DNA of 64,000 nucleotides from IMGVR_UViG_3300027759_000046:124001-188000, one strand, 5' to 3'; positions 15,517 to 62,899 are shown, counted from the first letter of the stretch. Notes: generated by a model from the sequence alone, not told the origin. A program made the numbers and translations.

Positions 15517-15517
15517 A

Positions 15518-49698: not shown

Positions 49699-49879
49699 AC
49701 TAGGGAGTACCTGGCAACCTGACCAGCCTCCAGACCCTATAGACCCAGACACGGGACTAGGGAGTAACCCCGAACCCTGAGCCAGACCCCAGACTCGCCT
49801 GACCCCGATGGGACTAGGGAGTGCCGGGCAGCCAGCCGCCCTTGGGGTACCTGCTCGGCCTGCTTAAACACTAGGGAGT
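49699..49879 (+). repeat. Array of four ACTAGGGAGT sites at exact 57-bp period
   Basis: Starts at 49699, 49756, 49813, 49870; 47-bp intervening sequences diverged. Confidence 0.95.
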
Positions 49880-50013
49880 ACGGTGACCCCCTCGGCCTCG
49901 CCGGAAACTCTGGACTCCAGGGTCTCGCGGGGCCGGGGATGCCGAGACTATAGGGACTGGACGGGACATGGGGATCCGCGGAGTCTCGGCAGACCGGGTA
50001 TAAATAAGTCTAT

Positions 50014-50682: not shown

Positions 50683-51053
50683 CTAAATATTGTTGGATTA
50701 CGGCGGCCCCATTCTCTGAGCAAGACGCCAGCCTGGGAGTTTGCCTCGTTCTCTATGTCAGATCCGTCGGCACCGTCCAAGACCTTGCCGCTGTCGCGCT
50801 GATGATGGTGTACCAATTCATGGGCCAAGGTTCTGTACCAGTCTGCACGGACTCTGGTTCCGCGAAGAACCCAGATCTCATTGGACTGTGGATTAAAGTA
50901 TCCCATTGACTTATTTAACATAGCCTCCCTATGGTCATCAGAAATGTGGATCGTTGGGGTGCTGGTCCAGCCTAACTGCTGACGACAGAAGTGTACGAAC
51001 TCCTCTAATTCGGAGTCTTCCTGCCATTCACGGGATTCTTTAATGTATTTCAT
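50679..51053 (-). CDS. HExxH metallopeptidase-like protein with CTS-like start
   Basis: MKYIKE; TLAHELVHH...E.EAN..AG; late promoter at 51057-51066. Confidence 0.75.
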   Translation of the reverse strand: MKYIKESREWQEDSELEEFVHFCRQQLGWTSTPTIHISDDHREAMLNKSMGYFNPQSNEIWVLRGTRVRADWYRTLAHELVHHHQRDSGKVLDGADGSDIENEANSQAGVLLREWGRRNPTIFS

Positions 51054-51249
51054 ATAGTTATTTATTCATGGAGTTCTCAGCGAACCCCAGAAATGTGACC
51101 TTTGTACCTGTCTCGGGGTTTCCCCCAGCACGGGGCGAGCTCCAGAGCCCATGCCAGGTCGGCACGGCCCCGGGGCTTTGGGCGCCTTATTCTAATATAC
51201 CATTTTGCCCATCATTCGGCAATTAAATAATAAAAAAATAAGATACGTT

Positions 51250-51384
51250 ATGGCTAAACAGATTATTGCAAGACTCCACCTTGCTAAACCCAAAGTAAAG
51301 AAACCCGGCGTACACGCCAAGTCCGGTTCCTCTCGCAACAAGAGATCCAAGAACTACAAGAAGCCCAACGTTGGACAGGGCTAA
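51250..51384 (+). CDS. Small highly basic protein (44 aa, not in ORF track)
   Basis: MAKQIIARLHLAKPKVKKPGVHAKSGSSRNKRSKNYKKPNVGQG. Confidence 0.65.
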   Translation: MAKQIIARLHLAKPKVKKPGVHAKSGSSRNKRSKNYKKPNVGQG

Positions 51385-51389
51385 ACCCA

Positions 51390-51421
51390 AAAAAGGGACT
51401 CCACTAGGGAGTCCCTCTCTT
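51390..51421. terminator. Bidirectional terminator containing an ACTAGGGAGT copy
   Basis: AAAAAAGGGACTCC-ACTAG-GGAGTCCCT. Confidence 0.75.
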
Positions 51422-51441
51422 CATTAACCAATTAACCTTTC

Positions 51442-52560
51442 CTAGATAGCAGCTAGGTCTGCGTGTTGTAGATCCCAAGTCTTAGCGAATAGATTTCCAC
51501 CGTCGACCTTGAAACGTTTTGAGTTCTCGAAGTTGAAGATCGACTGGTGACTTCCAATCCATGTCAACTCGTTAACTACATCCCATACAGTAGCATCAGT
51601 CTTGATAAACTTCTTCTGTGCGTCTGTTAGGGTCAATGGGTTGTGGCCCTTACGGAAGATACGTTTTGTTGCCGCATCGTATTCTGGAAAGAACTGTTGT
51701 TCTGCTGCCTTGATTAGGTGAGCCTTCATGTCAGGATTTTCTTCCTTGATCTGGCCAGTTACTGAGTACATCGCTCGCTCTAATTCTCCGTAGCTTGCAC
51801 GTGTTGTCATCGCTGTTTCCAATCTGTCTTGGAAAGTTCTTGGTACAAATCCTACCTTTGCCCAACCGTTCATGCTCGTTAAGAGTTCGCGGAAAGCGTC
51901 TTGGCCTTTACCAAACTCGAATGCTGTATTCAAGTTTCTGGCTACTGCACCGTTTGCGCAGCTTAGGCGTAAGAAGAAGTCGTCTACTCTTGAGTTGATA
52001 TTGGAGTTTACTAGGGAGATCCCGAAGCGGAACACCTCGTCCTTACCGATCTTCTCAAAGCCTACTTGACTGCCGTGGATGAGGTTGATACTTAAGCCGT
52101 TCTTGCCGCCATGGTCGATTGACTCTACATGCATGTCGGGGATCTCGTTAAGGATCGTCTCCGCCGTGTTGAATAGGGTCTCATTGCTTAGACGATGGTA
52201 ACGATCTGCCTTTACGATATCGCCAACTTCGCGTTTGTCCGCATCGCCGATAAGTAAGAACTCTTTTGAACCGTCACGCGTTTCTGAATAGGCTTTAACT
52301 GCCTGTAATAGTTTGGTCGCGACAGCTCTGTCCTCGTTCTTGTCCATGCGGCTAAGCAACGTGGATTGGATATTGACTGCCTGTCCCAAGCGGTTGAAGA
52401 ACCTGTTAGAGACTGGGATACGTGCGCCATCGATAAAGATGCATCCGTTCTTGATTGAACTATCGTCGATCTGAATATCAGATAACTTAACTCGCTTTGT
52501 TAGCGGATCCTGTCCTGCGAGATTTGCTTTGCTTTCGCTAAATTGACTTTGATTAATCAT
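51442..52560 (-). CDS. DUF932/DUF945-like protein
   Basis: Y.RLSN, FGISLVNS and LRLSCANG motifs. Confidence 0.6.
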   Translation of the reverse strand: MINQSQFSESKANLAGQDPLTKRVKLSDIQIDDSSIKNGCIFIDGARIPVSNRFFNRLGQAVNIQSTLLSRMDKNEDRAVATKLLQAVKAYSETRDGSKEFLLIGDADKREVGDIVKADRYHRLSNETLFNTAETILNEIPDMHVESIDHGGKNGLSINLIHGSQVGFEKIGKDEVFRFGISLVNSNINSRVDDFFLRLSCANGAVARNLNTAFEFGKGQDAFRELLTSMNGWAKVGFVPRTFQDRLETAMTTRASYGELERAMYSVTGQIKEENPDMKAHLIKAAEQQFFPEYDAATKRIFRKGHNPLTLTDAQKKFIKTDATVWDVVNELTWIGSHQSIFNFENSKRFKVDGGNLFAKTWDLQHADLAAI

Positions 52561-52588
52561 GTGGTATATGGTTTTTTGGTTTATATTA

Positions 52589-53689
52589 TTATACTAAATT
52601 GTCTGTAGCTTCGTCCGTTTGCGGAGCAATAGTTTCCTCTTCAGTTGGGGTCTTAACTGATAAGAAGAGATCGTTGAACTTGTGTTCCAACTCCTGACGA
52701 CGAGCTGACTCCTCATCCGCAAGTTTAGCAACCTCGGTCTCCTGTCTCCATGAGGTCTCGTCCCACTTGACTTCACCGTTTACTAGGGAGTAGTATAGAC
52801 GCTTACCGACTAGGCTTCCTCCACGTCTGTTCTTTGAGAACTCTACGAAACGTCTGCCTGACTCGTCGAACTTGATCTCCATCATGGATGTGGTCGCATG
52901 TTTAAGATAGGTAGATCCTACATACTGTCCGCCTTTCGTCATGTGCTGAATTGCAAAGATTGTTTTGCCGTGTTTGTCAGCAGCTTCGATGATGAGGTTG
53001 GTCAGCCATGTCTGGGCTCTCGTAGATTTCCAGCCTAGGATATCCGCAAGCTTTACAATAATATCCTGATGAGAGTCAATCAAGATTACGTCGTGATCCC
53101 CTTTGATTGTGTCTTCCAACACCTTGTCGAAACGACCCATCACGTAGTCCATAACCAATAAGGTCGGAACGTTCGCAATGATTGGGGTTTTTTGGAAGTA
53201 GAAGTAGAGATCGTTACGAGTCATCTCACTTGAGATGTAGAGGATCTTGGCCTCGGGCTGTACTCGCTTGATCTTAGAGATAAGATCCAATGTCACGGTT
53301 GATTTACCTACGCCCGACTCGCCGATTACAATATTAGCAGTTCCCGAAAAGATACCACCGTCTTCCGTATGGTCCGAGAAAAGCTTGTCAATAATACCGC
53401 CCGTCTTGTAGGCTTTAAACTCTGGGAAATCCATCTCACCGATCTCGATAATCTCGGCCACCATGTCTTGGGGTACCTCGATGGTAGGGGTTACTAGGGA
53501 GTCCGTCGTGATACCGGCTCTGAGCTTCTTTATTACTCCATTGAAGAGACCGTAACTCACATTGGCATCTGCACCTGTGGTCATGAACTCTGTGTAGAGC
53601 TGCTGTACTGTCTTGTCCGTTGGGACCTCGCCGTTATGGCTTTGTTCGAAGAAGGTTCGAACCGTAAGTTCTTTTTTTCCGATCTGCAT
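52589..53689 (-). CDS. RecA/RadA(Sms)-like ATPase
   Basis: GGIFSG...GESGVGKST, YISSEM, ILIDS, H.TK.G...G...LKH, KNRRG; lacks Zn finger and Lon-like domain. Confidence 0.8.
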   Translation of the reverse strand: MQIGKKELTVRTFFEQSHNGEVPTDKTVQQLYTEFMTTGADANVSYGLFNGVIKKLRAGITTDSLVTPTIEVPQDMVAEIIEIGEMDFPEFKAYKTGGIIDKLFSDHTEDGGIFSGTANIVIGESGVGKSTVTLDLISKIKRVQPEAKILYISSEMTRNDLYFYFQKTPIIANVPTLLVMDYVMGRFDKVLEDTIKGDHDVILIDSHQDIIVKLADILGWKSTRAQTWLTNLIIEAADKHGKTIFAIQHMTKGGQYVGSTYLKHATTSMMEIKFDESGRRFVEFSKNRRGGSLVGKRLYYSLVNGEVKWDETSWRQETEVAKLADEESARRQELEHKFNDLFLSVKTPTEEETIAPQTDEATDNLV

Positions 53690-53805
53690 ATTTTATTTGG
53701 GGTTAATTGGTTTATAATATTATACTACAGTTCTGCAGTTTTGGCTTCAGTTCTTCAGTTTTTTATTATTTATTTAGACTGAAGAACCGGCCGGACTAGG
53801 GAGTA

Positions 53806-53979
53806 CTACTCATCAAAGTACAGGAACTCAACCGCTTCCGCGCATTCAAACATTCCAAGGTCTTCGAACATGGTGTAGGCTCCGTCAGCATCGCTCATCG
53901 CGACCACCTCCATTGCCTGGTACACGGCGTCCTCGCCGAACTGGGCTATTGCTGCATCTATTTTTTCTTGTGTTACCAT
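53806..53979 (-). CDS. Small acidic protein (57 aa, not in ORF track)
   Basis: MVTQEKIDAAIAQFGEDAVYQAMEVVAMSDADGAYTMFEDLG...FDE. Confidence 0.7.
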   Translation of the reverse strand: MVTQEKIDAAIAQFGEDAVYQAMEVVAMSDADGAYTMFEDLGMFECAEAVEFLYFDE

Positions 53980-53984
53980 AGTTT

Positions 53985-54122
53985 CTATTTTATAATGATT
54001 GTAAATTCTGAACCGAAAGCCATTTGATATTCGCGCTCCAACTCTCTGGCCTCTTTAAGAGTTTTGGCGGTGTCAACTACCTCGCGACCGTAGCGCGATA
54101 CTGCTATGATTTTATATGTCAT
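53985..54122 (-). CDS. Small protein (45 aa, not in ORF track)
   Basis: MTYKIIAVSRYGREVVDTAKTLKEARELEREYQMAFGSEFTIIIK. Confidence 0.7.
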   Translation of the reverse strand: MTYKIIAVSRYGREVVDTAKTLKEARELEREYQMAFGSEFTIIIK

Positions 54123-54124
54123 GA

Positions 54125-54538
54125 TTAGATTGATTTTAAAAGTTGAGTAAATGTTTGAGCTTCAGCAAGTGGCTTATCAAAACCAGTTGCTCGTGAAAAT
54201 GCTTCGGCCTTGCCGTTGTGGCCAGATTTACCGGTTACCCAGAAGAGTACCTCACCGGATTCGCGATCGCAGATTGAGAAGGAATCGTATAGAGGTCCGC
54301 TCATTGGGCAATTGTTCTTGAAGAACACATAGGTCTTTGTACAATCGATAGCACGACCTGATTCGCGAAGCGCATTGACGAACTTGATTACTTGACCCTG
54401 TAGTTTCTTTGCTCTCATGGGTAGAGATGAGTCCTTACAGAACCAATCATAGAAGTCATGGCAATGTGGATAAAGAGCTGATTGGCCTTGGGCCCATGCG
54501 TACATTTGGTCTGCGATTGATACTTGATTTTCTGTCAT
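54125..54538 (-). CDS. Early hypothetical protein
   Basis: DWFCKD...FKNNCP...LYD.F.ICD. Confidence 0.75.
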   Translation of the reverse strand: MTENQVSIADQMYAWAQGQSALYPHCHDFYDWFCKDSSLPMRAKKLQGQVIKFVNALRESGRAIDCTKTYVFFKNNCPMSGPLYDSFSICDRESGEVLFWVTGKSGHNGKAEAFSRATGFDKPLAEAQTFTQLLKSI

Positions 54539-54575
54539 ACGTTAAAGGTTTAATGGTTTAAGAATTAATTGATAT

Positions 54576-54660
54576 GTAAATATAATACATTAGTTTGACA
54601 CTAAAAAACTTTTTATGACTTATTTTCAAAAAAGTTATTAACATTGGATTGTTAATAACT
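54576..54660 (-). promoter_or_regulatory. Early promoter cassette with phased GTTATTAACA box (inverted pair here)
   Basis: TGTTAATAAC-TTTTTTGAAAATAAGTCATAAAAAGTTTT...TATATTTAC. Confidence 0.8.
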
Positions 54661-54736
54661 CGCAGAGTCTGAGGCAGGTCGGAGTATACCTCCCGCTTCC
54701 TTGTTCCGAACCGTCCCGTCTAGATTGATTGACATA

Positions 54737-54804
54737 GTAAATATAATAAAAAACCCTGAATCTAAAAAATCCAGGGTCATTTATTTTCAGGAAAGTTATT
54801 AACA
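54737..54804 (-). promoter_or_regulatory. Early promoter cassette
   Basis: Box 58 bp from the TATATTTAC element; drives a ~75-nt non-coding stretch. Confidence 0.75.
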
Positions 54805-54808
54805 ATTT

Positions 54809-55033
54809 CTAGTGTTCAGGAATCTCTAATTCTAGGTCTCCGATCTTTACTGTCTTGCCGATGAGGTCTCGACTGCTTGCCGCTTTGGCATGGCCGCGGT
54901 GGTCATGGTAATCAAGGTCTATTTCTTCAGTCGCGTTCGCAAGTAGGTTAAACATCTGTTCCGGTTCTTTTACACAAACCTCCCTGCCGTTTTCATAAAG
55001 GTATAGTCGTACTATCTCGTTCATGGTGGTCAT
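54809..55033 (-). CDS. Early hypothetical protein
   Basis: 74-aa ORF. Confidence 0.7.
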   Translation of the reverse strand: MTTMNEIVRLYLYENGREVCVKEPEQMFNLLANATEEIDLDYHDHRGHAKAASSRDLIGKTVKIGDLELEIPEH

Positions 55034-55065
55034 GGGTTTTTTGTTATTTAATAAAAAGAAAGGGG

Positions 55066-55446
55066 TTATAAACCCCTTTGCAATATTTCCTTTTCTCTTT
55101 GAGTTAGGGACTCAACTCCCGATCTCGAAATTTTATCAAGGATTTCGTCCACCGTTAAATCCGGTGTTGCAGTTTGCGCTGCCGTTTTGAGTACCGCATT
55201 GATCGCTTGCATCAACGCCTCAGGAAGATTTAGGTTCACCTTAGTTTCTTCCATTAAGAAGAATGTGGCTCCTGTTTCCTTCACATCCTGGGTGATCTCT
55301 TCCTCTGATGATTGAGTATTAAAGACCGACAGGATTGCGCCCGGAATTGGTGCGGCGAATGCGGGTCCTACAATGTGGGGTTTCAACGCTTGTGAAACCG
55401 CTGGGTTCGGAGCTGAGCCGAATCGAACTAAGAATAATTTTTTCAT
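55066..55446 (-). CDS. Protein with C-terminal DUF6576-like domain
   Basis: VDEILDKISRSGVESLTQREKEIL. Confidence 0.7.
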   Translation of the reverse strand: MKKLFLVRFGSAPNPAVSQALKPHIVGPAFAAPIPGAILSVFNTQSSEEEITQDVKETGATFFLMEETKVNLNLPEALMQAINAVLKTAAQTATPDLTVDEILDKISRSGVESLTQREKEILQRGL

Positions 55447-55469
55447 ATTTGGTTAGATTGATTTATAAA

Positions 55470-55537
55470 GCTAATATACAACAAAACTTTTAAATAAAAA
55501 AACTTTTGATGAATTATTTTCAGAAAAGTTATTAACA
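55470..55537 (-). promoter_or_regulatory. Early promoter cassette
   Basis: TGTATATTAGC element with box at 58 bp. Confidence 0.8.
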
Positions 55538-55589
55538 AAAAAGGGAGCCACATGGACTCCCGATCTTGTCAATAAACCAATTTTACCAA

Positions 55590-55886
55590 TTATACCAAAT
55601 GTAGTATCTCAGCTAGAGCGCGATCAGTTACTCGTCGGCTCATACCTCCAATATGCCATTCAATAGTTTCTTCTTTCGAGATGCGACGGTATTCTTTCCA
55701 GTCGTAGATGGTAAATACATCTCCTTCTTCCGTTTCGCAAATCCATTCGAAATTTACTTTATCTTCTCCAGTATTATCTTCAATCGTGGGTTCTCCAAGG
55801 ATTGCGATAAGGTCATTCACTGAACACTTTAATACTGTATCGTGGAACGAGGTTCCGCCTGCACGCTTTTCGGTTTTTCTAGCCAT
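55590..55886 (-). CDS. Early hypothetical protein
   Basis: DKVNFEW...FTIYDWK...WHIGG; promoter TGTATATTAGC at 55913-55923. Confidence 0.75.
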   Translation of the reverse strand: MARKTEKRAGGTSFHDTVLKCSVNDLIAILGEPTIEDNTGEDKVNFEWICETEEGDVFTIYDWKEYRRISKEETIEWHIGGMSRRVTDRALAEILHLV

Positions 55887-55950
55887 GGTTATTTTTTTAG
55901 TTGGTTGATAAAGCTAATATACAACAAAAACCTGATACTGGAAAATCTTT

Positions 55951-56274
55951 TTAAATATTTTTTACAGGTATTTTCTCGATCAAGGCTAGGCTGCCAAGCG
56001 GAGACCACATAGCCTCTTCATAGCTTTCAAACCGGGACCGGTCCCATAGCCAGACCAGACCGTGCTTCTTCCATTCCTCTCGCGCTGCACGCTCTGTCCT
56101 GCTTGCTTCGGCGATCTGCATCTGAAACAAGGCAATTGCATACACGGCTTTAAATGTTCCGCAGACACAGACAGGTTTTTCTTCTTCCCCTACACGAGAG
56201 GTTAGCAACCAGACTTCTTTATTTTTCCGGGTTGGACTAGGCATGTTAATCTCTTTTTTCTGGTACGAATACAC
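55951..56274 (-). CDS. Hypothetical protein
   Basis: 107-aa ORF. Confidence 0.6.
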   Translation of the reverse strand: MYSYQKKEINMPSPTRKNKEVWLLTSRVGEEEKPVCVCGTFKAVYAIALFQMQIAEASRTERAAREEWKKHGLVWLWDRSRFESYEEAMWSPLGSLALIEKIPVKNI

Positions 56275-56353
56275 AGTAGATACAGAATGCTACACTTACT
56301 AGGATTGCTATTGCGCACATGGTTGAATGGATTAAGGGGTTAATAATATTATC

Positions 56354-56602
56354 TTACCCAAGTTCTTCACTTAACTTCTTGAGGTCAGCACATTTCTCGT
56401 ACTGCTCTTTCTTTTCAAAATGCAAGATCATGGTCCAGATAGCCTGTTTCTTTTCTTCCATTGGGGTTCCATCGTGCACGACATCTCTGAATTCGCCGGC
56501 CAGTGCTTCATAGAGTCTGTCCATGAATCCATCGTAATCTGATTCGCGCAGCCGGATAAGTTCCAGCAGGATATCGTTGTATGTTCTGGTTTTCTTTGCC
56601 AT
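56354..56602 (-). CDS. Hypothetical protein with UVR-like C-terminus
   Basis: FEKKEQYEKCADLKKL. Confidence 0.65.
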   Translation of the reverse strand: MAKKTRTYNDILLELIRLRESDYDGFMDRLYEALAGEFRDVVHDGTPMEEKKQAIWTMILHFEKKEQYEKCADLKKLSEELG

Positions 56603-56721
56603 ATCTTTATTATTTATTCTTGTTTATTTAGAGTCACTCAGCGTGAATCTTAGCTTGTCTATAATATAGTACTAAAAAAGGGTCTTCGGAACACCGAGAC
56701 CCTTAATAATAATTTGGATTA

Positions 56722-57048
56722 CTAGATAAATTGGGTTAGGTAGCCGGTCGGCCAGCCCTCATCGTCCTGTTCAAAGTCCATGTCTGTCTGAATCAGGTCC
56801 GAGTAAATGCTTAGCTTCTCGCGTGGTTCCAGCCCGGCAAAGCAGTTAGAGATTAGGGTATCTACTGATTCGTCTGGTACAAACTCATCGTCCAACCTGA
56901 CTGAACCATCTTCTAACATGAAGATGTCTACTGCTAAGTTCTCTCGCATTATGTCTATTGCATCTGCTGCATTTAACTCTGCAAGGTAAGCGTCTACTTG
57001 TTCGAACGCTTCTTCAATTGGAACTCTTAATAGGTCTGGATTTCTCAT
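56722..57048 (-). CDS. Acidic hypothetical protein
   Basis: 108-aa ORF. Confidence 0.7.
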   Translation of the reverse strand: MRNPDLLRVPIEEAFEQVDAYLAELNAADAIDIMRENLAVDIFMLEDGSVRLDDEFVPDESVDTLISNCFAGLEPREKLSIYSDLIQTDMDFEQDDEGWPTGYLTQFI

Positions 57049-57061
57049 TGTTAAATCTTGG

Positions 57062-57187
57062 TTAGGGTTGATAAAAGAATAGAATACACGTTGCTACTAC
57101 TGCGAGAGCAATGATAATCAATGCTCCATTAATTAGAGAATCTCTTCTCATCATTTTAACTTCTTTTTCTGAAAATTTCTTTGCCAT
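57062..57187 (-). CDS. Small membrane protein (41 aa, not in ORF track)
   Basis: MAKKFSEKEVKMMRRDSLINGALIIIALAVVATCILFFYQP. Confidence 0.6.
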   Translation of the reverse strand: MAKKFSEKEVKMMRRDSLINGALIIIALAVVATCILFFYQP

Positions 57188-57223
57188 CTTTTTTATATTT
57201 TAATTGATTAATAATTTAGGTAA

Positions 57224-57679
57224 TTAGGCGGCGTTCTTTACGAACGCCTTGTCTGCCCATGTCTTAGCTCCAGCCATCCTATAATTATTCTGACTGTATA
57301 GATTAGTATTAGACCAGTCTTGATTGATGTCGCCCACTTCCATTGCCAGGAACATGTCCGAATCCATTAACTTGATCTTGTTACCTGACCTTGCGAATAC
57401 AGTGATGAAGGTTTCTGATCCTTCTGCTCTGAACTCGATTGTCTGCAACGCGCCTTTTTTAAATCCTCTGAATACATCCATTGCAGAGTTCCAAGACTGT
57501 CTTCCCCAATTTGCTCTAATGCCATGGTCTTCAACGACTGTCATGAAGCCTGCCTGTACTCGAACGATTGCGCGGTATTCGCCTTTACGGCCTTGGATAA
57601 AATCCACTTGGCTGATTCTCTCCGCATTGAAGATTTCAACTGATGGTTTGTAGTCTGGATTAAATTGTTTCTTTTTCAT
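57224..57679 (-). CDS. Early hypothetical protein
   Basis: 151-aa ORF; partial promoter cassette at 57704-57755. Confidence 0.75.
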   Translation of the reverse strand: MKKKQFNPDYKPSVEIFNAERISQVDFIQGRKGEYRAIVRVQAGFMTVVEDHGIRANWGRQSWNSAMDVFRGFKKGALQTIEFRAEGSETFITVFARSGNKIKLMDSDMFLAMEVGDINQDWSNTNLYSQNNYRMAGAKTWADKAFVKNAA

Positions 57680-57754
57680 GGTTGATTGATTTGGTTTATA
57701 ATAGTAAATATAATACTTATTCTTGACAGTAAAAAACTTTTTATGAATTATTTT

Positions 57755-58063
57755 TTAAAATCTTTCTGAACCTAAATGAGAGCAGGCAGAAGAGTATCTC
57801 TCGAGAAGGTTGCTGCCGGCTAGCAGAAGAAAGCTTGAACCTGCAATTCCACGGATCTTATAATCTTCAGGTACTATAACACTGCCAAGTCTGCTGCCGC
57901 CTGAATCCAGTGTCATAATGAATCTACCTTCTCGAACCACTATGAATTCGGAAGAGAAGCCTTCCATCGTAGAGCCCGACGCAATTTGAGTCCAGCCAAT
58001 TTCTTGACCAGACTCGTTTAAGATTTGGAGGCTTGAACCTCGTTGTATAACATTACCTATCAT
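57755..58063 (-). CDS. Hypothetical beta-rich protein
   Basis: 102-aa ORF with a two-fold internal repeat-like pattern. Confidence 0.65.
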   Translation of the reverse strand: MIGNVIQRGSSLQILNESGQEIGWTQIASGSTMEGFSSEFIVVREGRFIMTLDSGGSRLGSVIVPEDYKIRGIAGSSFLLLAGSNLLERYSSACSHLGSERF

Positions 58064-58278
58064 GCTGTTGTCTTTGAATTTTTAATACACTCTTGAAATT
58101 CTTCTTCCGTCAGGTCAGGTATATCCTGAGTTACAAGCTTTAGCAGGGTTGCTGCTTCTATCTCTGTTACTAGGGAGTCCTTATTGACTTTGCCCTTAAA
58201 AGGATCTCCTTCAGAGAATAGAATCTCGACTGCGGTCTCTGCCCAGAAGCGGGCTTCTAATTGAGTTGTCATTATCAT
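58060..58278 (-). CDS. Hypothetical protein
   Basis: 72-aa ORF. Confidence 0.65.
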   Translation of the reverse strand: MIMTTQLEARFWAETAVEILFSEGDPFKGKVNKDSLVTEIEAATLLKLVTQDIPDLTEEEFQECIKNSKTTA

Positions 58279-58994
58279 ACGCCTACCTCCTTTCTCATTT
58301 TAGCACGAGCAACCTTAAGGGCACGGTTAACTTCGACTGGGGTTTTACCTACTGCATCCGCAACTTCCTTGGTAGAGAGACCGTCTCCAACGAGACCGTA
58401 GAACAACTCGACGATTTGACGTTCAGTTGGTTTAAGAACGTTAAGTACTCTACGGAGTATTCGGGTTTGGTCCTCACTATCGAATGGGTCTTGGAAATCT
58501 TCTCTTAACAAGAGATCGCCTACTGTATCGTCGCCATCCTCGCCGATTGGACGATCCAATTGGATGTTACGCATGTTAATGCTTTCGCCTGCCATCTTAC
58601 GTTTGTAAAGATCGTATTCCTGATTTACTGGAATTCGGACAGTACGACCGACTTCGCAAAGAGCAAGGTTTAATCTCTTACGAATCCAGAACTGAGCGTA
58701 AGTAATAAACTTTACGTCTTTATCTGGGGTAAAACGACGAGCAGCTTCGATAAGACCCGCATTACCTTCTTGGATTAAGTCATCGATGGAAAGACCCATA
58801 CCGATAAACTTGTTTGCAAGAGTAACAACGAACTTAAGATTCGCTTGTACTAATTGATGCATTGCTCGCTCATCTCCTTTCTGGATGCGGACTGCTAATT
58901 GAAGTTCTTCAGCCTTGCTGAGCGGAACTGCTACGGGCGCGATATCTTTGAAATATTGCGGTAGACTTTCTGATGTTTCGAATCTTTTCGACAT
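58275..58994 (-). CDS. RNA polymerase sigma-70 family factor (regions 1.2-4)
   Basis: PLSKAEE..LA..I..GD..A...LV.ANL.FV, DLIQEGN.GL..AA..F, KFITYA.FWIR, C-terminal HTH. Confidence 0.95.
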   Translation of the reverse strand: MSKRFETSESLPQYFKDIAPVAVPLSKAEELQLAVRIQKGDERAMHQLVQANLKFVVTLANKFIGMGLSIDDLIQEGNAGLIEAARRFTPDKDVKFITYAQFWIRKRLNLALCEVGRTVRIPVNQEYDLYKRKMAGESINMRNIQLDRPIGEDGDDTVGDLLLREDFQDPFDSEDQTRILRRVLNVLKPTERQIVELFYGLVGDGLSTKEVADAVGKTPVEVNRALKVARAKMRKEVGV

Positions 58995-59024
58995 AGTTGG
59001 TTTGGTTTAATTGATTATTATAAT

Positions 59025-59092
59025 GTAAATATAAACAAAATTTCTGACAAGTAAAAACTTTTTATGACTTATTTTCAAAAAAGTTATTAACA
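59025..59092 (-). promoter_or_regulatory. Early promoter cassette driving the sigma factor
   Basis: TATATTTAC element with GTTATTAACA box at 58 bp. Confidence 0.8.
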
Positions 59093-59096
59093 ATTG

Positions 59097-59207
59097 TTAG
59101 TTAACAACTTGACCGCAATCGCAGCATTTTACAAGTTTGATTCCTGAAACGTGGCGAACTGCTACGTAAGTTCTGATGTGTTGGCATTTGGCTGATTGGT
59201 TATTCAT
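59097..59207 (-). CDS. 36-aa Cys/His peptide (not in ORF track)
   Basis: MNNQSAKCQHIRTYVAVRHVSGIKLVKCCDCGQVVN; own partial promoter cassette at 59211-59265. Confidence 0.6.
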   Translation of the reverse strand: MNNQSAKCQHIRTYVAVRHVSGIKLVKCCDCGQVVN

Positions 59208-59329
59208 AATGTAAATATAACTATAATACTTGACAGTAAAAAACTTTTTGTGAATTATTTTCAAATTATTTTATACGCGAAAAGGGGTCCAACCACGGAC
59301 CCCAATTCTATCAATCAACCAATAGTATT

Positions 59330-59611
59330 TTAATTTAAGCAGATTCCTGTTTCTCGTAACAGGTTCTCTAATTGTATATCTTCTTCAGACATGCCTGATT
59401 CTCTCTTAACCTGTTTAATACAGAACTGCATAAGCAATCGTTGAAGCTCTTGCGTACTGCGCTCGTCCTGTGTTGCGGCCAATAGGGTTATTAATCCATT
59501 ACCGATTAAGATAAGTTCTGAATCAGATGTCTTGATTCCGCCCGCGATTAGGCTATTCGCCAAGGTCTCTAGCTCGGCTCTTGTTTTTTCTCTAATTTCT
59601 TTCTTATTCAT
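59330..59611 (-). CDS. Hypothetical protein
   Basis: 93-aa ORF. Confidence 0.7.
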   Translation of the reverse strand: MNKKEIREKTRAELETLANSLIAGGIKTSDSELILIGNGLITLLAATQDERSTQELQRLLMQFCIKQVKRESGMSEEDIQLENLLRETGICLN

Positions 59612-59639
59612 GGTAGTTGATTATTGATTTAATCTTATA

Positions 59640-59834
59640 TTACTCTTTTCCAAGCGCGATGGCCTTGTTCACTTCATAGATTCTTGACCAGAATTCGTTG
59701 TATTCAAGTTGATTGTCTGGCTTTACAGTTGACTGTACTCTCGCACCGCCGCCATAGGTTAAGTCAATGGGTTCTCCGATCGTTGGATCAATTCCCTGTA
59801 ATTTATAGATTAAGGCCTTAAGTATTTTCTTCAT
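59640..59834 (-). CDS. Hypothetical protein
   Basis: 64-aa ORF. Confidence 0.65.
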   Translation of the reverse strand: MKKILKALIYKLQGIDPTIGEPIDLTYGGGARVQSTVKPDNQLEYNEFWSRIYEVNKAIALGKE

Positions 59835-59949
59835 AGTTATTAGGTTTTACAGATTAAGTTTGTTTTTTAAGGGTCACGCGATTCCCCCAGTACTACTGCG
59901 TGGTCCAGGACCCATGCCTGGGAGGCACGGAAATCCAGGACTAGGTCTA

Positions 59950-60144
59950 TTAACAGATTCGATTGGCCACAAAGCCTTGTGCATCGCTTGCGCCATAGTA
60001 TTTCTTGATCGCGGCCGGTGCGGTAGGATTATCCATCAGCCAGCCATCCGCAATATCGAACGCCATTGAATCGTCTATGTCTCCGGCATCGATTGCGCCC
60101 AGTGCAAGCTCTCGTAATTCAGTATCTAATTTTTCTTTTGTCAT
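59950..60144 (-). CDS. Hypothetical protein
   Basis: 64-aa ORF. Confidence 0.65.
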   Translation of the reverse strand: MTKEKLDTELRELALGAIDAGDIDDSMAFDIADGWLMDNPTAPAAIKKYYGASDAQGFVANRIC

Positions 60145-60203
60145 AGGTATTAGTTTTAGGGTTTAGGGTTAGATTTATAATCAACTGTTACTAGGGAGTC
60201 CGG

Positions 60204-60671
60204 CTAGGCCAGACCCTTGTCTCGTAAAAACAGGCAGCGCTGAATCCTGGTATACAGGTCCGGCAAGGAGTCTGTCATCGCTAAGATCTTCTTTAGGTCA
60301 GGCTTGGGTAGGGTTGACGCAACCATCGCAACCGCAACATCGATTGGATTACCGAGCTTCAGCTGCTCCATGATCTGGCTCGAGCCGGTTGGGCTGATTG
60401 AGCCGGGAATCTTGCACTGTGCTCCGAACTCAAATTGATAGAAGGATTGACGTTCCGTCTGATCAACTAAACTTGCATCAAGCATCTGTCTCACGCGCTG
60501 GATATGCTTGCTTGTCGTGCGGCTGTACTTGCCCTTTGTCATGAGAACTGGTCTACGGCTCAGCTCCTTTGGATAGAACTGTAGGGTCGCGACATGGGTT
60601 TCGTAGCTTATTACCTTGTTCCCAACGAGGAATAGGTTCTGTGCAATCTGTAGAGATGGTTGGAATTTCAT
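60204..60671 (-). CDS. Early hypothetical protein
   Basis: VISY.THVA...KYSRTTSKH motif; shortened promoter cassette at 60675-60721. Confidence 0.7.
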   Translation of the reverse strand: MKFQPSLQIAQNLFLVGNKVISYETHVATLQFYPKELSRRPVLMTKGKYSRTTSKHIQRVRQMLDASLVDQTERQSFYQFEFGAQCKIPGSISPTGSSQIMEQLKLGNPIDVAVAMVASTLPKPDLKKILAMTDSLPDLYTRIQRCLFLRDKGLA

Positions 60672-60755
60672 AGGTTAAATATAAGCATTTTAATTGAGAT
60701 AAAACAATAAAGTTATTAACATAGCTACTAGGGAGTCCGACATAGCCGGTGAGTC

Positions 60756-61274
60756 CTATGACTCTACCGGCGAGAATACTTCGGCAAGGTTGAAGTTGCC
60801 AGCCTGACTGCTGTGAAGCATACGCTCTAAGCATACGGGACCGAGCGCTGTGTGAATCGATTCCGGATGGGTAAGCGGTAATCCGCAAGCGCAGCATCTG
60901 CCTTCGTGGAATAGACCTACACGACCGCGTAAGATCTCTGGATTCTTGATCGCTGATACGACCCAGCCTAGGGCGCGAGCTAAGCGGGAATCCGGTCTAA
61001 CGTTGCGGCCGAGCTTTACGTGCATGGTATCAGAGAATAGAGTTCCTGCGAACTGCGAGCTTTGACGGCCGTCGTTAAGCAAGGAGATGTCAATGTAATA
61101 GATCGGCAACTTGATCTTGCGATCCTGCTTATCGCGCAGCTGCTTGATCTTAACTGTCATGTGGGTTCCTTCCGCAAGGTTACGGAACGTAAGCACTGCA
61201 CGGCCTGCTAACGCGAGCTTTGGAAGAGCAAGCGGGTTGAGGTTTGGACGGGGGATGTTTCTGTGGTTTCTCAT
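60756..61274 (-). CDS. Protein with C-terminal DUF6011-like Zn-binding motif
   Basis: HEGRCCACG.PLT.PESI...LGPVC. Confidence 0.75.
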   Translation of the reverse strand: MRNHRNIPRPNLNPLALPKLALAGRAVLTFRNLAEGTHMTVKIKQLRDKQDRKIKLPIYYIDISLLNDGRQSSQFAGTLFSDTMHVKLGRNVRPDSRLARALGWVVSAIKNPEILRGRVGLFHEGRCCACGLPLTHPESIHTALGPVCLERMLHSSQAGNFNLAEVFSPVES

Positions 61275-61297
61275 GGTTGATTGGTTTAATTGATTAA

Positions 61298-61376
61298 GTA
61301 AATATAACCAATTACTTTCAAATAAAAAAACTTTTTATGATTTATTTTTCAGAAGTTATTAACAAAGTTATTAACA
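61298..61376 (-). promoter_or_regulatory. Early promoter cassette with tandem direct GTTATTAACA boxes
   Basis: Boxes at 61355-61364 and 61367-61376. Confidence 0.8.
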
Positions 61377-61437
61377 CTGGCGGACTGACGTGCAGGTCGG
61401 AGTCTACCCTCTGCGATCCGGTTAAAGATCGAACCTT

Positions 61438-61461
61438 AAAAAACCGGGCGAACCCGGTTCT
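61438..61461 (-). terminator. Intrinsic terminator
   Basis: AACCGGG-TTCG-CCCGGTT followed by TTTT. Confidence 0.85.
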
Positions 61462-61478
61462 CTGTGGTGGGTTGAGGT

Positions 61479-61622
61479 TTAGAACTCGAACGCGGTCGTT
61501 GAGGAGATATTACCGATTACGACATTTACGATTACGACAACGATTCCGATAATCGCGATTCCCGCTAGACACACGGTCCAAGTTTGCATTGCACGTAGTG
61601 CGATCATTTCTGTTTTGCTCAT
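61479..61622 (-). CDS. Small membrane protein (47 aa, not in ORF track)
   Basis: MSKTEMIALRAMQTWTVCLAGIAIIGIVVVIVNVVIGNISSTTAFEF; promoter cassette at 61652-61718. Confidence 0.65.
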   Translation of the reverse strand: MSKTEMIALRAMQTWTVCLAGIAIIGIVVVIVNVVIGNISSTTAFEF

Positions 61623-61695
61623 GGTTGATTTGGTTAATTGGTTAAACATAAGTAAATATAATAATTATCTTTGATATAAAAAAATTTCTGATGAA

Positions 61696-61932
61696 TTATT
61701 TTTCAGAAGTTATTAACAATTCCGGGTTAACGCTTTCGGATTCCGCATAGATCTTTAGACATTGCGGACAGCCTACCGTCTCGAGACCGGATATCCTGGC
61801 CCAGTTGTTGCTAAGCGCTGGCGTTCCGCACAGGTTTCCTGTTCCGCTTTTGTAGATGTGGGCCGTGTTGTTCCATACGTTGCCCTTGTTTCCGAAGATG
61901 GAGAAGTTTGGTTTGAGGTCTTTTGTTTGCAT
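61696..61932 (-). CDS. Small Cys/His protein
   Basis: AHI...LCG...GC..C; promoter TATATTTAC at 61955-61963. Confidence 0.7.
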   Translation of the reverse strand: MQTKDLKPNFSIFGNKGNVWNNTAHIYKSGTGNLCGTPALSNNWARISGLETVGCPQCLKIYAESESVNPELLITSEK

Positions 61933-62131
61933 TGCTTTCTTTTTTATTGGTTAAGTAAATATAACAAAAAAACCCCAAACAAAAAAATCTGGGGTCTTTT
62001 ATTTTCTTCTTTTTTTCTAGAGGCAATGGATAAGGATTCCGTAAAATCCTATTCCTGCCAAAAAGTAAATCAGGTTGTTCAACCACTTAGGGTATTTTTC
62101 CATGCTTCTCGTTTAGGGTTAATAATAGATT

Positions 62132-62293
62132 CTATTCTTCGGGTCCAATGAGGTCCCATGCGGTTTCGCCGGTTGGCTTGCCGTTGAAGGTGATGGAGTA
62201 GTTGGGGTCCATGCCGCTCTCGAGGACATCTGCTAAGAGAGCAGGAAGGGTTGGGAATTCCTTTTGGTAGTAGGCGCAGTCTAATGAATACAT
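62132..62293 (-). CDS. Small hypothetical protein
   Basis: Start moved to MYSLDCAYY because the track start overlaps the promoter TTATATTTG (62321-62329), an exact Bacteroidota -7 consensus. Confidence 0.65.
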   Translation of the reverse strand: MYSLDCAYYQKEFPTLPALLADVLESGMDPNYSITFNGKPTGETAWDLIGPEE

Positions 62294-62371
62294 ATCTTTT
62301 CTTTTTAATTGGTTAAGATACAAATATAACCAAAATACTTGATATTAAAAAATCCTGGTCAACTTATTTTC

Positions 62372-62899
62372 CTAGCTGAATACAAGTATTCCTTCATCCG
62401 CTGCGAGTTTAAACGCCTTAAGGAAATCTTCATACACTTCCAAGAACCAGCCATTATCCTCGTTTAGCGGATCGCCCACATATCCTTCCGCCTTGTGCCG
62501 GTACCGTACAAAATCCTGATATAGACTCTTCGCAACGGGACCGCCGATTGCACCATCACAATCCGAATGGTTGATAAGACCCACAAAGGGTTTATCCTTC
62601 CACTCGTCGGGATTGGTCCATACCCGTTCAGGACTTACCTCCAACATGGTCAGACACAGAACTTTGCGCCAGGCATTATATCCTGAATAGGAGCCAGCAC
62701 GGAAGTCATAGCTCTCGCTGCGGTCAGTTGCATAGTAGGTTCCCGGACTCAGACCCTTGTAGGAGTTGGCATCGAACGTTTCTATTCGGTATACTTCTTC
62801 GCCGCGCTCGGCAAGGCCAAGTTCTTCAAGACGTTTTTGACCTGCCGAGAACTCGGTCTCTTCTTGAATCTTTGAGTAGGCATAGATATCTAATCCCAT
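62372..62899 (-). CDS. Hypothetical protein with RLxxLGL segment
   Basis: MGLDIYAY...KRLEELGLAE...FRAGSYSGYN.WR...LI.HSDCDG. Confidence 0.75.
   Translation of the reverse strand: MGLDIYAYSKIQEETEFSAGQKRLEELGLAERGEEVYRIETFDANSYKGLSPGTYYATDRSESYDFRAGSYSGYNAWRKVLCLTMLEVSPERVWTNPDEWKDKPFVGLINHSDCDGAIGGPVAKSLYQDFVRYRHKAEGYVGDPLNEDNGWFLEVYEDFLKAFKLAADEGILVFS

What the first reader, a model, noticed from the sequence alone, without database searches (positions are those of the whole stretch)
54576..62345. Repeated early-promoter cassette with a helically phased GTTATTAACA box resembling a DnaA box
Seen: about 12 related cassettes. The box starts 58, 58, 58, 58, 57 and 57 bp from the TATATTTAC/TATATTAGC element (54634, 54795, 55528, 59083, 61355, 61709), and 37 bp (two turns less) at 60712. 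It is doubled at 54650 (inverted) and 61367 (direct), with phased A/T tracts between. TTATTAACA matches the DnaA box TTATCCACA at 7 of 9 positions. Inference: a host factor (possibly DnaA) or an injected factor co-activates all early promoters, or the boxes titrate it.
Basis: partly seen in the sequence, partly recalled or inferred. Interest (0 to 1): 0.65.

Follow-up and report, generated by a model that had tools for sequence, protein, structure and literature searches.

The report
Phased palindromic box upstream of phage promoters
A 250-kb T4-like lake phage, probably of Bacteroidota, drives its small early genes from about 13 near-identical promoter cassettes, and seven carry an invariant palindromic 10-bp box one, two or three helical turns upstream of the promoter core, which looks like the docking site of an unknown regulator rather than of DnaA.

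Summary
The exact 10-mer occurs 9 times in the 253-kb genome, and all 9 lie in window 54634-61718. The stated distances to the -10-like element are correct.

The genes run on the minus strand, so the box reads TGTTAATAAC. It sits upstream of a promoter whose -10 region matches the Bacteroidota sigma-A -7 box (TAnnTTTG).

In seven related uncultured phage lineages the box is invariant and, apart from inverted hairpin partners, points the same way. It lies 38, 48 or 58-60 bp from the -10 and never in between. Orthologous promoters switch between these classes by 10-11-bp indels of A/T-tract modules, and they gain or lose the box. One sister lineage has the same cassettes with no box.

The core, GTTA-A-TAAC, is a palindrome with conserved flanks, and it never drifts toward TTATCCACA. 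DnaA is therefore unlikely.

The best reading is a PeSL-like early promoter/terminator cassette of a T4-like jumbo phage. It carries an optional upstream operator, locked to one helical face, for an unidentified dimeric factor. In about one box in six, the box also forms the 3' arm of a terminator hairpin. No binder could be identified, and the function is inferred, not shown.

The parts
54576..54659 (-). Cassette P54584 in front of the 137-aa gene 54125-54538. It has the -10/-7 element at 54576-54584, the TGTCAA and T6 elements, A/T-tract modules, the box at 54634-54643 and an inverted box copy at 54650-54659.
   Evidence: The inverted copy plus the box fold into a 12-bp hairpin followed by a U-run.
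54737..54804 (-). Cassette P54745, with -10 at 54737-54745 and box at 54795-54804. A G+C-rich hairpin replaces the TGTCAA region. It drives a non-coding RNA candidate, not an ORF.
54628..54730 (-). Conserved non-coding RNA candidate of about 90 nt. Its terminator-like hairpin is built from the inverted box pair at 54634-54659.
   Evidence: Its core is conserved in L005, L007, L010, L012 and L013. The consensus fold keeps the terminal hairpin, with G-U pairs in 3 lineages. MFE is -28.1 kcal/mol, z = -2.4. There is no Rfam or tRNA hit.
55470..55537 (-). Cassette P55478 in front of the DUF6576 gene 55066-55446, with -10 at 55470-55478 and box at 55528-55537. A G+C-rich terminator hairpin lies directly upstream, at 55543-55561.
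   Evidence: The RNA contig of run X1 ends at 55452, 18 nt below the -10.
55913..55975 (-). Cassette P55921 without a box.
56660..56700 (-). Divergent promoter (TATATTATA) directly after a G+C-rich terminator hairpin. It has no box and belongs to the TTTTTTAGTA-type class seen at the orthologous gene in relatives.
57704..57770 (-). Cassette P57712 without a box, in front of the 151-aa gene.
59025..59092 (-). Cassette P59033 in front of the sigma-70-family gene 58275-58994, with -10 at 59025-59033 and box at 59083-59092. An upstream partial inverted copy pairs with the box as a hairpin.
   Evidence: The RNA contig of X1 ends at 59007, 18 nt below the -10.
59211..59275 (-). Cassette P59219 without a box, in front of a 36-aa ORF.
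60675..60721 (-). Short cassette P60683, with -10 at 60675-60683 and box at 60712-60721. The box is two helical turns closer to the core than in the long cassettes. CTCCCTAGT lies directly upstream.
61298..61376 (-). Cassette P61306 in front of the DUF6011 gene 60756-61274, with -10 at 61298-61306 and two direct boxes at 61355-61364 and 61367-61376, 12 bp apart.
61652..61718 (-). Cassette P61660, with -10 at 61652-61660 and box at 61709-61718. The box overlaps the 3' end of the upstream ORF 61696-61932.
61955..62010 (-). Cassette P61963 without a box. A terminator hairpin is fused to the -35 region.
62320..62375 (-). Cassette P62328 without a box. Its -10 is TATATTTGT, a full match to TAnnTTTG.
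58275..58994 (-). Phage sigma-70-family factor (regions 1.2, 2, 3, 4), itself expressed from a box cassette.
   Evidence: It is one of three sigma-like ORFs in the genome.

Best explanation
Window 54.5-62.4 kb is the hyperplastic early-gene region of a T4-like jumbo phage whose host is most likely a member of the Bacteroidota. Each small gene or operon on the minus strand is preceded by a composite promoter(-terminator) cassette, the counterpart of the PeSL cassettes of T4-type coliphages.

Anatomy, with TA of the -7 box set at -12:
- a host sigma-A-type -7 box (TATATTT followed by A or G) at -12 to -5;
- a conserved TGTCAA at about -28 to -23;
- a T6 run at about -36 to -31;
- upstream of these, zero, one or two A/T-tract modules of about 10 bp each.

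The box (TGTTAATAAC in the sense orientation, core palindrome GTTA-A-TAAC, flanked by aAT and TTt) is an optional extra module at the upstream edge. Its centre falls at about -45, -55 or -65 to -67, which is always the same face of the helix.

The most likely function is an operator for a dimeric, sequence-specific DNA-binding protein, host-encoded or phage-delivered and not identified here. That protein would touch RNA polymerase from upstream and tune a subset of the early promoters. This could be class-I-type activation, or phi29 p4-like holding and repression.

Secondarily, about one box in six pairs with an upstream inverted copy. It then forms the 3' arm of a weak terminator hairpin followed by a U-run.

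What is shown: the anatomy, the confinement to this region, the invariance, the phasing, the gain and loss, and the hairpins. What is inferred: host assignment, early timing, protein binding, and the direction of the effect.
For: Confinement. All 9 exact copies in the 253-kb genome lie in 7.1 kb. The cassette words are confined to genome 178.5-186.4 kb.

Orientation and context. All genes are on the minus strand, with an ATG 25-45 nt after the -10.

Host-type promoter. Relatives read TATATTTGC or TATATTTGT, the Bacteroidota sigma-A -7 consensus TAnnTTTG placed at -12 to -5 in PMC9723704. Shine-Dalgarno cores are depleted (4% against 10.6% at random positions) and leaders are A-rich. The nearest phages are uncultured huge phages and Chryseobacterium phages. 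A 254-kb relative is binned in a Bacteroidetes MAG.

T4-like identity. The genome has a gp23-type capsid protein, both topoisomerase II subunits and RNA ligases.

Phasing. Across 63 box cassettes in 8 lineages (61 distinct sequences) the spacings are 38 (13), 48 (14), 58 (11), 59 (17) and 60 (8), with none in between. Circular concentration peaks at a period of 10.5-10.75 bp (R = 0.94). Even counting only three independent classes, P is about 0.01.

Evolutionary behaviour. Orthologous promoters switch class: the DUF6011 gene has 58, 48 or 59-60; the DUF6576 gene has 48 in L011 and 59 in its close relative L012, through an 11-bp indel.

Selection on the box. The spacers vary (information content 0.2-1.2 bits) while the conserved flanks reach 0.5-2.0 bits. 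Outside the decayed upstream copies of doubled boxes, variant boxes are very rare: GGTTAATAAC in L013, and CGTTAATAAC at the L004 sigma promoter, both keeping the palindromic core.

Tie to the promoter. The distance to the upstream stop codon varies from 0 to about 100 nt, whereas the distance to the -10 is quantised. 62 of 63 boxes have a cassette promoter downstream.

RNA. Metatranscriptome contigs of the same strain cover the coding blocks. Two of them end 18 nt downstream of the -10 (55452 and 59007).

PeSL-like behaviour. Synteny blocks between this genome and L004 break at cassette edges, and gene content between cassettes is mosaic, as described for PeSLs (PMC2839356, PMC4122927).
Against: - No binding protein was identified.
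- The phage encodes no recognisable DnaA domain IV, HU/IHF, HTH_3, MotA or AsiA.
- The three families present in every box-bearing locus but missing from the box-less L010 locus gave no DNA-binding fold. Two were modelled: DUF6011 (172 aa) and the 93-aa protein. The third (64 aa) was not.
- The box is dispensable for the cassette: 6 of 13 here lack it, as do all cassettes in L010.
- The cassettes are paralogues, so shared orientation, and part of the spacing pattern, could come from descent and from the roughly 10-bp size of the A/T modules rather than from selection on phase.
- The box is not enriched in the non-phage contigs of the one candidate host MAG: 3 hits in 2.25 Mb, which is background level.
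- The RNA data are assembled contigs, which cannot prove transcript starts, and one low-depth contig covers box 59083.
Confidence: 0.55

Rival explanations
1. The box is a DnaA box. Host DnaA binds it and co-activates the promoters, or the boxes titrate DnaA.
For: TTATTAACA matches TTATCCACA at 7 of 9 positions and the relaxed consensus TTWTNCACA at 8 of 9. DnaA is known to act as a transcription factor in bacteria (PMC4447404).
Against: - The mismatch to the relaxed consensus is at position 6, inside the conserved core (PMC5043019).
- The conserved unit is a palindrome with conserved flanks that extend beyond the 9-mer.
- 61 of 61 copies in 8 lineages are identical, and none approaches the higher-affinity consensus.
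- A 7-of-9 match occurs at 762 places in this genome.
- The two perfect DnaA boxes in the genome are isolated, and the one in this window lies inside a gene.
- A sister lineage lacks the box altogether.
- The host oriC could not be examined, because the dnaA contig of the candidate MAG is only 2.2 kb.
Confidence: 0.04
2. The box has no binding factor. It is simply the best-conserved patch of a PeSL-like recombination cassette, kept uniform by gene conversion, and serves as a homology patch for modular gene shuffling.
For: Synteny breaks between close relatives fall at box and -10 edges. Gene content between cassettes is mosaic. Contigs of related strains join different cassettes (table 5). PeSLs work this way (PMC2839356).
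Against: - Ten to 16 bp is too short a homology patch, and the rest of the cassette (about 60 bp) is less conserved than the box.
- Identity is maintained between lineages whose sigma factors are only 72-76% identical.
- Indels preserve the helical phase.
- Gene conversion does not explain why the box is palindromic.
Confidence: 0.12
3. The box acts in RNA, at the 3' end of the upstream transcript. It would be the descending arm of an intrinsic terminator, or a site for an RNase or an RNA-binding protein.
For: The box is always followed by TT and usually by a T-run. About 12 of 66 boxes pair with an upstream inverted copy in a 10-12-bp hairpin, and G-U pairs are tolerated, which points to RNA. 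This hairpin ends the conserved small RNA.
Against: - Most boxes (about 50 of 66) have no partner, and the upstream flank is unconserved.
- Several boxes follow an independent G+C-rich terminator.
- The distance to the upstream stop codon is variable, while the distance to the downstream -10 is quantised in helical turns. An RNA signal would not require that.
Confidence: 0.12
4. The box is an UP-element-like sequence contacted directly by the alpha C-terminal domains of host RNA polymerase, without a separate factor.
For: It is A/T-rich, lies between -41 and -72, sits next to phased A/T tracts, and can be displaced by whole turns, as UP elements can (established knowledge for E. coli rrnB P1).
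Against: The G and C are invariant, all 10-12 positions are invariant, and the symmetry is dyadic. UP elements are degenerate A/T tracts and show none of these. Box-less cassettes keep the A/T modules, which already look like the UP-type element.
Confidence: 0.12
5. The cassette holds a divergent sigma-70-type promoter on the + strand (TTGACA, 17 bp, AATTAT), with the box at its transcription start as an operator for antisense transcripts.
For: In the long cassettes the + strand reads TTGACA-N17-AATTAT.
Against: The putative -10 disappears in the 38- and 48-bp classes while the minus-strand core is invariant. There are no + strand ORFs downstream. Bacteroidota sigma-A does not use TTGACA/TATAAT.
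Confidence: 0.03

Closest known systems
PeSL (promoter-early stem-loop) cassettes of T4-type phages (Arbiol et al. 2010, PMC2839356; Comeau et al. 2014, PMC4122927)
   Same: - Repeated cassettes of about 60-100 bp upstream of ORFans in a hyperplastic region of a T4-like genome.
- An early promoter matching the host primary-sigma consensus.
- An A/T-rich stretch upstream of the -35 region.
- Stem-loop terminators placed variably: upstream of, or fused with, the -35 region.
- Indel and replacement breakpoints between relatives that fall at the cassettes.
   Different: - The promoter is of the Bacteroidota type (-7 TAnnTTTG) rather than sigma-70 TTGACA/TATAAT.
- There is a conserved TGTCAA at about -25.
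- Above all, there is an invariant palindromic box at whole-turn distances, which has not been described for PeSLs.
- Mini-circles and promoter or terminator activity were not tested here.
Class I activator sites such as CRP at -61.5, -71.5 and -82.5 (established knowledge for E. coli)
   Same: A dyad-symmetric site upstream of the core promoter that occurs only at positions differing by whole helical turns.
   Different: The site is much shorter (9-bp core, about 16 bp with flanks). The centres lie at about -45, -55 and -66. The protein is unknown, the host phylum is different, and no activity data exist.
Phage phi29 protein p4 sites upstream of the A2c and A3 promoters (established knowledge)
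   Same: A phage-specific factor binds inverted repeats upstream of early promoters and acts through the polymerase alpha subunit, repressing early and activating late transcription. This shows that an upstream, phased site can mean shut-off as well as activation.
   Different: There is no p4 homologue, the sequence is unrelated, and the box occurs at many promoters rather than at one control region.
DnaA box (TTATCCACA; TTWTNCACA)
   Same: A 9-mer similar at 7 of 9 positions, A/T-rich on its 5' side.
   Different: The box is palindromic, has conserved flanks, carries A instead of the core C at position 6, and is invariant rather than a family of graded-affinity sites.
T4 early promoters with UP-type A/T elements, and T4 middle promoters with a MotA box at -30 (established knowledge)
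   Same: Phage promoters that combine a host -10 with phage-specific conserved upstream elements. The conserved TGTCAA at about -25 occupies a position like that of the MotA box.
   Different: No MotA or AsiA homologue was found. The box lies much further upstream.

Membership tests
DnaA box | Fits the consensus TTWTNCACA, including the conserved core at positions 4-8 | tested here: not met
   TTATTAACA has A where the core C stands at position 6. The consensus is as quoted in PMC5043019.
DnaA box | An asymmetric 9-mer whose natural copies vary around the consensus with graded affinities | tested here: not met
   The core is a palindrome with conserved flanks, and the 61 cassettes are identical.
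DnaA box | The same sequence is used in the host oriC, and DnaA binds it | tested here: inconclusive
   The candidate host MAG has dnaA on a 2.2-kb contig with one 8-of-9 DnaA box and no box copy. Binding is not testable with these tools.
PeSL cassette | Repeated early promoter matching the host primary-sigma consensus, with an A/T-rich upstream stretch | tested here: met
   TATATTT(A/G) fits TAnnTTTG. A/T modules lie upstream. The host phylum is inferred.
PeSL cassette | An associated stem-loop terminator at a variable position | tested here: met
   G+C-rich hairpins lie inside P54745 and P61963 and directly upstream of P55478, P56668 and P59219. There are box hairpins at P54584 and P59033.
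PeSL cassette | Sits upstream of ORFans in a hyperplastic region of a T4-like genome, with indel breakpoints between relatives at the cassettes | tested here: met
   gp23, topoisomerase II and RNA ligases are present. The ORFs have no family assignments. Breakpoints are and the mosaic gene content.
PeSL cassette | Demonstrated promoter and terminator activity, and mini-circle formation | not testable with these tools
   Only contig-level RNA coverage is available, and it is merely consistent with transcription units bounded by cassettes.
Class I-type activator site | A dyad-symmetric site upstream of the core promoter, at positions differing by whole helical turns | tested here: met
   The core is GTTA-A-TAAC. 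Spacings are 38, 48 and 58-60 only, with the best-fitting period at 10.5-10.75 bp.
Class I-type activator site | A cognate DNA-binding activator exists and raises transcription | tested here: inconclusive
   No candidate was found among phage proteins. Host proteins could not be screened.
UP element | A degenerate A/T tract without specific G or C, at -40 to -60 | tested here: not met
   The box has an invariant G and C and full positional invariance. The A/T modules between the box and the core do fit.
Intrinsic terminator | A stable hairpin directly followed by a U-run | tested here: met
   This holds only for a subset. flags 16 of 66 boxes as paired, of which about 12 form a full 10-12-bp stem with an upstream inverted copy followed by T-runs. 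The hairpin is conserved after the small RNA in 5 lineages, with G-U pairs.

The most novel reading that the evidence does not exclude
The box is the operator of a so-far-unknown regulator, either a Bacteroidota host protein hijacked at the moment of infection or a protein delivered with the phage DNA. That regulator would act on sigma-A RNA polymerase from -45, -55 or -65 and give a subset of early genes, including the phage's own sigma factor, a distinct strength or timing. This would be the first upstream-activator architecture defined for Bacteroidota-type (-33/-7) promoters, and a new, portable regulatory module riding on PeSL-like shuffling cassettes.
Probability: 0.35. Interest if true: 0.6.

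Novelty: new variant of a known kind. Interest (0 to 1): 0.45.

Why it matters
Transcription control in the Bacteroidota, and in their phages, is poorly understood. Their sigma-A uses -33/-7 promoters, and to my knowledge (no literature search was made on this point) almost nothing is known about upstream activation.

This region offers more than 60 natural variants of a single promoter design in eight phage lineages: with and without the box, and with the box one, two or three turns away. It is close to a ready-made mutational series.

If a factor binds the box, it could be fished out with one short oligonucleotide. It would also give a compact, phase-dependent control element for genetic tools in Bacteroidota.

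The data also extend the PeSL idea, in which promoter/terminator cassettes act as shuffling points for orphan genes, from coliphage-type T4 relatives to distant jumbo phages of another phylum.

If no factor binds, the finding reduces to an ordinary repeated early promoter.

Tried and rejected
- Cultured relatives. Megablast of the region against cultured phage records found nothing. Protein-level hits are all below 60% identity.
- Rfam and tRNA scans of the region gave nothing relevant.
- Literature. A full-text search for the box sequence returned only unrelated hits, mostly genome-editing papers.
- Phage-encoded binder, by family search. Pfam and PHROGs scans of 20 ORFs of the cluster found only the sigma factor, DUF6011 and DUF6576. 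Genome-wide searches for DnaA domain IV, HU/IHF, HTH_3, MotA-C and AsiA were all negative.
- Phage-encoded binder, by phyletic contrast. Comparing box-bearing loci with the box-less L010 locus singled out three families. ESM-Atlas look-alikes were uninformative. AlphaFold models of the DUF6011 protein (pLDDT 87) and the 93-aa protein (pLDDT 81) gave no significant PDB match: Foldseek E > 0.1, best VIA Z 4.9. No candidate can be named. This is not evidence that none exists.
- Host regulon. In the Bacteroidetes MAG that carries a related 254-kb phage contig, the box occurs 12 times in the phage contig and 3 times in the other 2.25 Mb, all in coding-like context. That MAG therefore shows no host regulon, but whether it is the host is uncertain.
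- Host oriC comparison was not possible, because the dnaA contig is too short.
- Plus-strand sigma-70-like promoter reading: rejected, because it is not conserved in the short and medium cassettes.
- RNA reads. Only assembled contigs were available, so transcript starts could not be mapped.

Full report
**What is there**

The window is bases 124,001-188,000 of a single 253,137-bp virus contig with 39% G+C. The exact 10-mer GTTATTAACA occurs nine times in that genome, and all nine lie between window 54634 and 61718: eight on the + strand and one on the - strand.

The frame needs correcting. Every gene between 54 and 64 kb is on the minus strand. Read in the sense direction, the order is: the upstream gene or its terminator, the box as TGTTAATAAC, A/T-tract modules, a T6 run, TGTCAA, 9-10 bp, TATATTTAC, 25-45 nt of A-rich leader, then ATG. 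There are 13 such cassettes. Seven carry the box and six do not.

**What organism**

The genome encodes a gp23-type major capsid protein, both subunits of a T4-type topoisomerase II and two RNA ligases. It also has 19 tRNA genes in the window and three sigma-70-like ORFs, one of them inside the cassette region. It is a T4-like jumbo phage.

No cultured phage is close. The best protein hits are uncultured huge phages of 460-640 kb, followed by Chryseobacterium phages.

Several lines point to a Bacteroidota host:
- Shine-Dalgarno cores occur upstream of only 4% of genes, against 10.6% at random positions, and leaders are A-rich and G-poor.
- The -10 element reads TATATTTGC or TATATTTGT in relatives. 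That is the sigma-A -7 box TAnnTTTG of Bacteroidota, which spans -12 to -5 in Flavobacterium psychrophilum (PMC9723704).
- A 254-kb relative sits in a MAG labelled Bacteroidetes.
- RNA and DNA runs that hold the sequence come from lake and freshwater samples.

The host assignment is an inference, not a demonstration.

**Relatives and the key result**

The sigma factor retrieved 22 IMG/VR loci: three identical to the window, one at 96% amino-acid identity, thirteen at 72-76%, and more distant ones.

In eight non-redundant lineages (this genome, L004, L005, L007, L009, L011, L012, L013) I found 66 boxes. All but the inverted hairpin partners point the same way, and 62 of 63 promoter-proximal boxes are followed by a cassette promoter.

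The distance from the first base of the box to the first base of the -10 element takes only these values: 38 (13 cassettes), 48 (14), 58 (11), 59 (17) and 60 (8). Nothing falls in between. The circular concentration of these distances peaks at a period of 10.5-10.75 bp, with R = 0.94 over 61 distinct sequences. Even if only three independent classes are counted, a uniform model gives P of about 0.01.

The classes differ by the presence of none, one or two A/T-tract modules of about 10 bp between the box and the T6 run.

Orthologous promoters change class. The DUF6011 gene has the box at 58 here and in L004, at 48 in L007, at 59-60 in L011-L013, and no box in L005 and L009. The DUF6576 gene has 48 in L011 and 59 in its close relative L012, through an 11-bp indel. 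The sigma gene has the box only here and, as CGTTAATAAC, in L004.

The L010 lineage (sigma 72% identical) carries about 15 cassettes with the same core and the same A/T modules, but not a single box.

The box is therefore an accessory module. It is gained and lost, and whenever it is present it is letter-perfect and on the same face of the helix.

**The motif**

Outside the positions I selected on, the flanks are also conserved: A, A, T before the box and T, T, T/C after it, with 0.5-2.0 bits each. The core GTTA-A-TAAC is a 9-bp palindrome, and the outer AA..TT are symmetric too. This gives an imperfect dyad of about 17 bp, the usual signature of a dimeric DNA-binding protein.

With TA of the -7 box at -12, the dyad centre lies at -45, -55 or -65 to -67.

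**Why not DnaA**

- The match to TTATCCACA is 7 of 9, a level reached by 762 sites in this genome.
- Against the relaxed consensus TTWTNCACA, the one mismatch falls at position 6. That lies in the core that is conserved across bacteria, and deviations from the consensus lower affinity (PMC5043019).
- DnaA boxes are asymmetric and vary around a consensus. This element is symmetric, longer, and invariant.
- The phage encodes no DnaA DNA-binding domain.
- The two perfect DnaA boxes in the genome are isolated. One, at window 54465-54473, lies inside a gene.
- I could not compare with a host oriC. In the candidate MAG, dnaA lies on a 2.2-kb contig.

**A second, local role**

In about 12 of 66 cases an upstream inverted copy (GTTGTTAACA or GTTATTAACA) lies 6-8 nt before the box. 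The pair forms a 10-12-bp hairpin followed by a U-run.

In three lineages the arm differs from the box complement by a change that gives a G-U pair. This suggests selection on RNA pairing rather than on a second protein site.

This hairpin ends a conserved non-coding RNA candidate of about 90 nt, which has its own cassette promoter (window 54628-54730, minus strand).

Most boxes have no partner, and several follow a separate G+C-rich terminator. I therefore regard the hairpin role as secondary.

**Expression**

A metatranscriptome from lake water holds 60% of the region's sampled words. Its contigs match the window exactly and cover the coding blocks 55077-55452, 55570-56590, 57188-57737 and 58320-59007.

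Two contigs end 18 nt downstream of the -10 elements of P55478 and P59033 and do not continue into the cassette. This fits transcript starts just below the -10.

Contigs cannot prove starts, and repeats also break assemblies. One low-depth contig spans box 59083. I treat this as consistent evidence, not proof.

**Family resemblance**

The cassettes fit the description of PeSLs in T4-type phages:
- host-consensus early promoters;
- an A/T-rich upstream stretch;
- a stem-loop at a variable position;
- a location in front of ORFans in hyperplastic regions;
- involvement in indels between relatives (PMC2839356, PMC4122927).

Here, synteny blocks between this genome and L004 break at 61721-61742 (the box of P61660), at 59100 and 59211 (the box of P59033 and the -10 of P59219), and at 60180. 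Gene content between cassettes is mosaic across lineages. Contigs of related strains join different cassettes (table 5).

The invariant, phase-locked palindromic box is not part of the PeSL description.

**Wider transcription scheme (inferred)**

Two other upstream motifs are strongly enriched genome-wide. ATAAATAA occurs in 57 upstream regions, mostly 10-14 or 25-30 nt before the ATG. (T)AGTATAATA occurs in about 20.

With three phage sigma-like ORFs, one of which is expressed from a box cassette, a cascade is plausible. In it the cassettes are the host-polymerase early class. That order is an inference.

**Mechanism I commit to**

The box is an optional upstream operator for a dimeric sequence-specific protein that contacts RNA polymerase from the same helical face and tunes a subset of early promoters. 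I put this at about 0.55.

Whether it activates (class-I-like) or holds and represses (as phi29 p4 does at A2c) cannot be decided. Nor can whether the protein is host-encoded, early phage-encoded or virion-borne.

Searches for a phage-encoded binder were negative or uninformative. The one candidate host MAG shows no enrichment of the box outside the phage contig.

The rivals are each less likely, for the reasons given under their entries:
- pure recombination homology;
- an RNA-level signal;
- direct alpha-CTD contact;
- DnaA;
- a divergent plus-strand promoter.

**Verdict**

The feature is real, non-random and evolutionarily conserved. The general idea of a phased factor site is supported, while the DnaA idea and 'all early promoters' are not.

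In kind it is a new variant of a known class: PeSL-like early promoter cassettes with an added phased operator. Interest is moderate. It would rise if a binder is found, because upstream activation at Bacteroidota-type promoters, as far as I know, is essentially uncharted.

Noticed in passing
window 54628-54730 (-) and about 61377-61445 (-); L005:14350-14470, L007:15626-15745, L012:13138-13260, L013:12875-12985, L010:4666-4775 and 9317-9425: A conserved non-coding RNA candidate of about 90 nt with its own cassette promoter. Its invariant core, GGTA(T/G)ACTCCGACCT, occurs at only these two places in the genome. It ends in the box hairpin plus a U-run. The second copy follows a terminator and has no obvious promoter. 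There is no Rfam or tRNA/tmRNA hit.
   Followed up: partly
window 49707-60735, minus strand; four copies at 49707, 49764, 49821 and 49878: CTCCCTAGT occurs 13 times in the 253-kb genome. All copies are on the minus strand and all lie in this 11-kb stretch. Four sit exactly 57 bp apart in a G+C-rich non-coding stretch between divergent genes. The motif also lies 5-8 nt upstream of the box in the short (38-bp) cassettes of five lineages. Possible readings are iterons of an origin or a promoter element for a phage sigma factor. This remains unexplained.
   Followed up: partly
whole genome (G000); examples upstream of window genes 48454-48918, 50014-50682, 51442-52560 and 52589-53689: Two further promoter-like motif classes are enriched upstream of genes. 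ATAAATAA is in 57 upstream regions, mostly 10-14 or 25-30 nt before the ATG. (T)AGTATAATA is in about 20, often directly after a G+C-rich hairpin and a T-run.
   Followed up: partly
G000:C1:182674-182853 (window 58275-58994), G000:C1:241507-241680 and G000:C1:25531-25689: Three sigma-70-region-2-containing ORFs in one phage genome suggest a sigma cascade. No MotA or AsiA homologue was found.
   Followed up: partly
window 1798-16279: There are 19 tRNA genes, all on the minus strand, most of them clustered at 11333-13732.
   Followed up: no
L082/L085 = CAIWBA010000291.1 (254,203 bp) in G001: A near-full-length relative of this phage is filed as a contig of a MAG labelled 'uncultured Bacteroidetes bacterium'. 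It carries 12 boxes in about 10 kb. This is either a hint to the host or a binning artefact.
   Followed up: partly
window 54627/59209, 54789/59213, 59243/57723 and 59263/59948 (joints in runs X2 and X4): Metatranscriptome contigs of related strains (90-95% identical) jump between different cassettes. This indicates other gene orders between cassettes in co-occurring strains, or repeat-induced assembly joins.
   Followed up: no
window 60756-61274 (-) and 59330-59611 (-): The DUF6011 protein (172 aa, with a C-terminal Cys-rich motif) and a 93-aa four-helix protein are present in every box-bearing locus and absent from the box-less L010 locus. Both fold confidently (pLDDT 87 and 81) but match no solved structure.
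   Followed up: yes
window 54465-54473 (-): One of the only two perfect TTATCCACA sites of the genome lies inside the 137-aa gene next to the first cassette. It is isolated and consistent with chance.
   Followed up: yes
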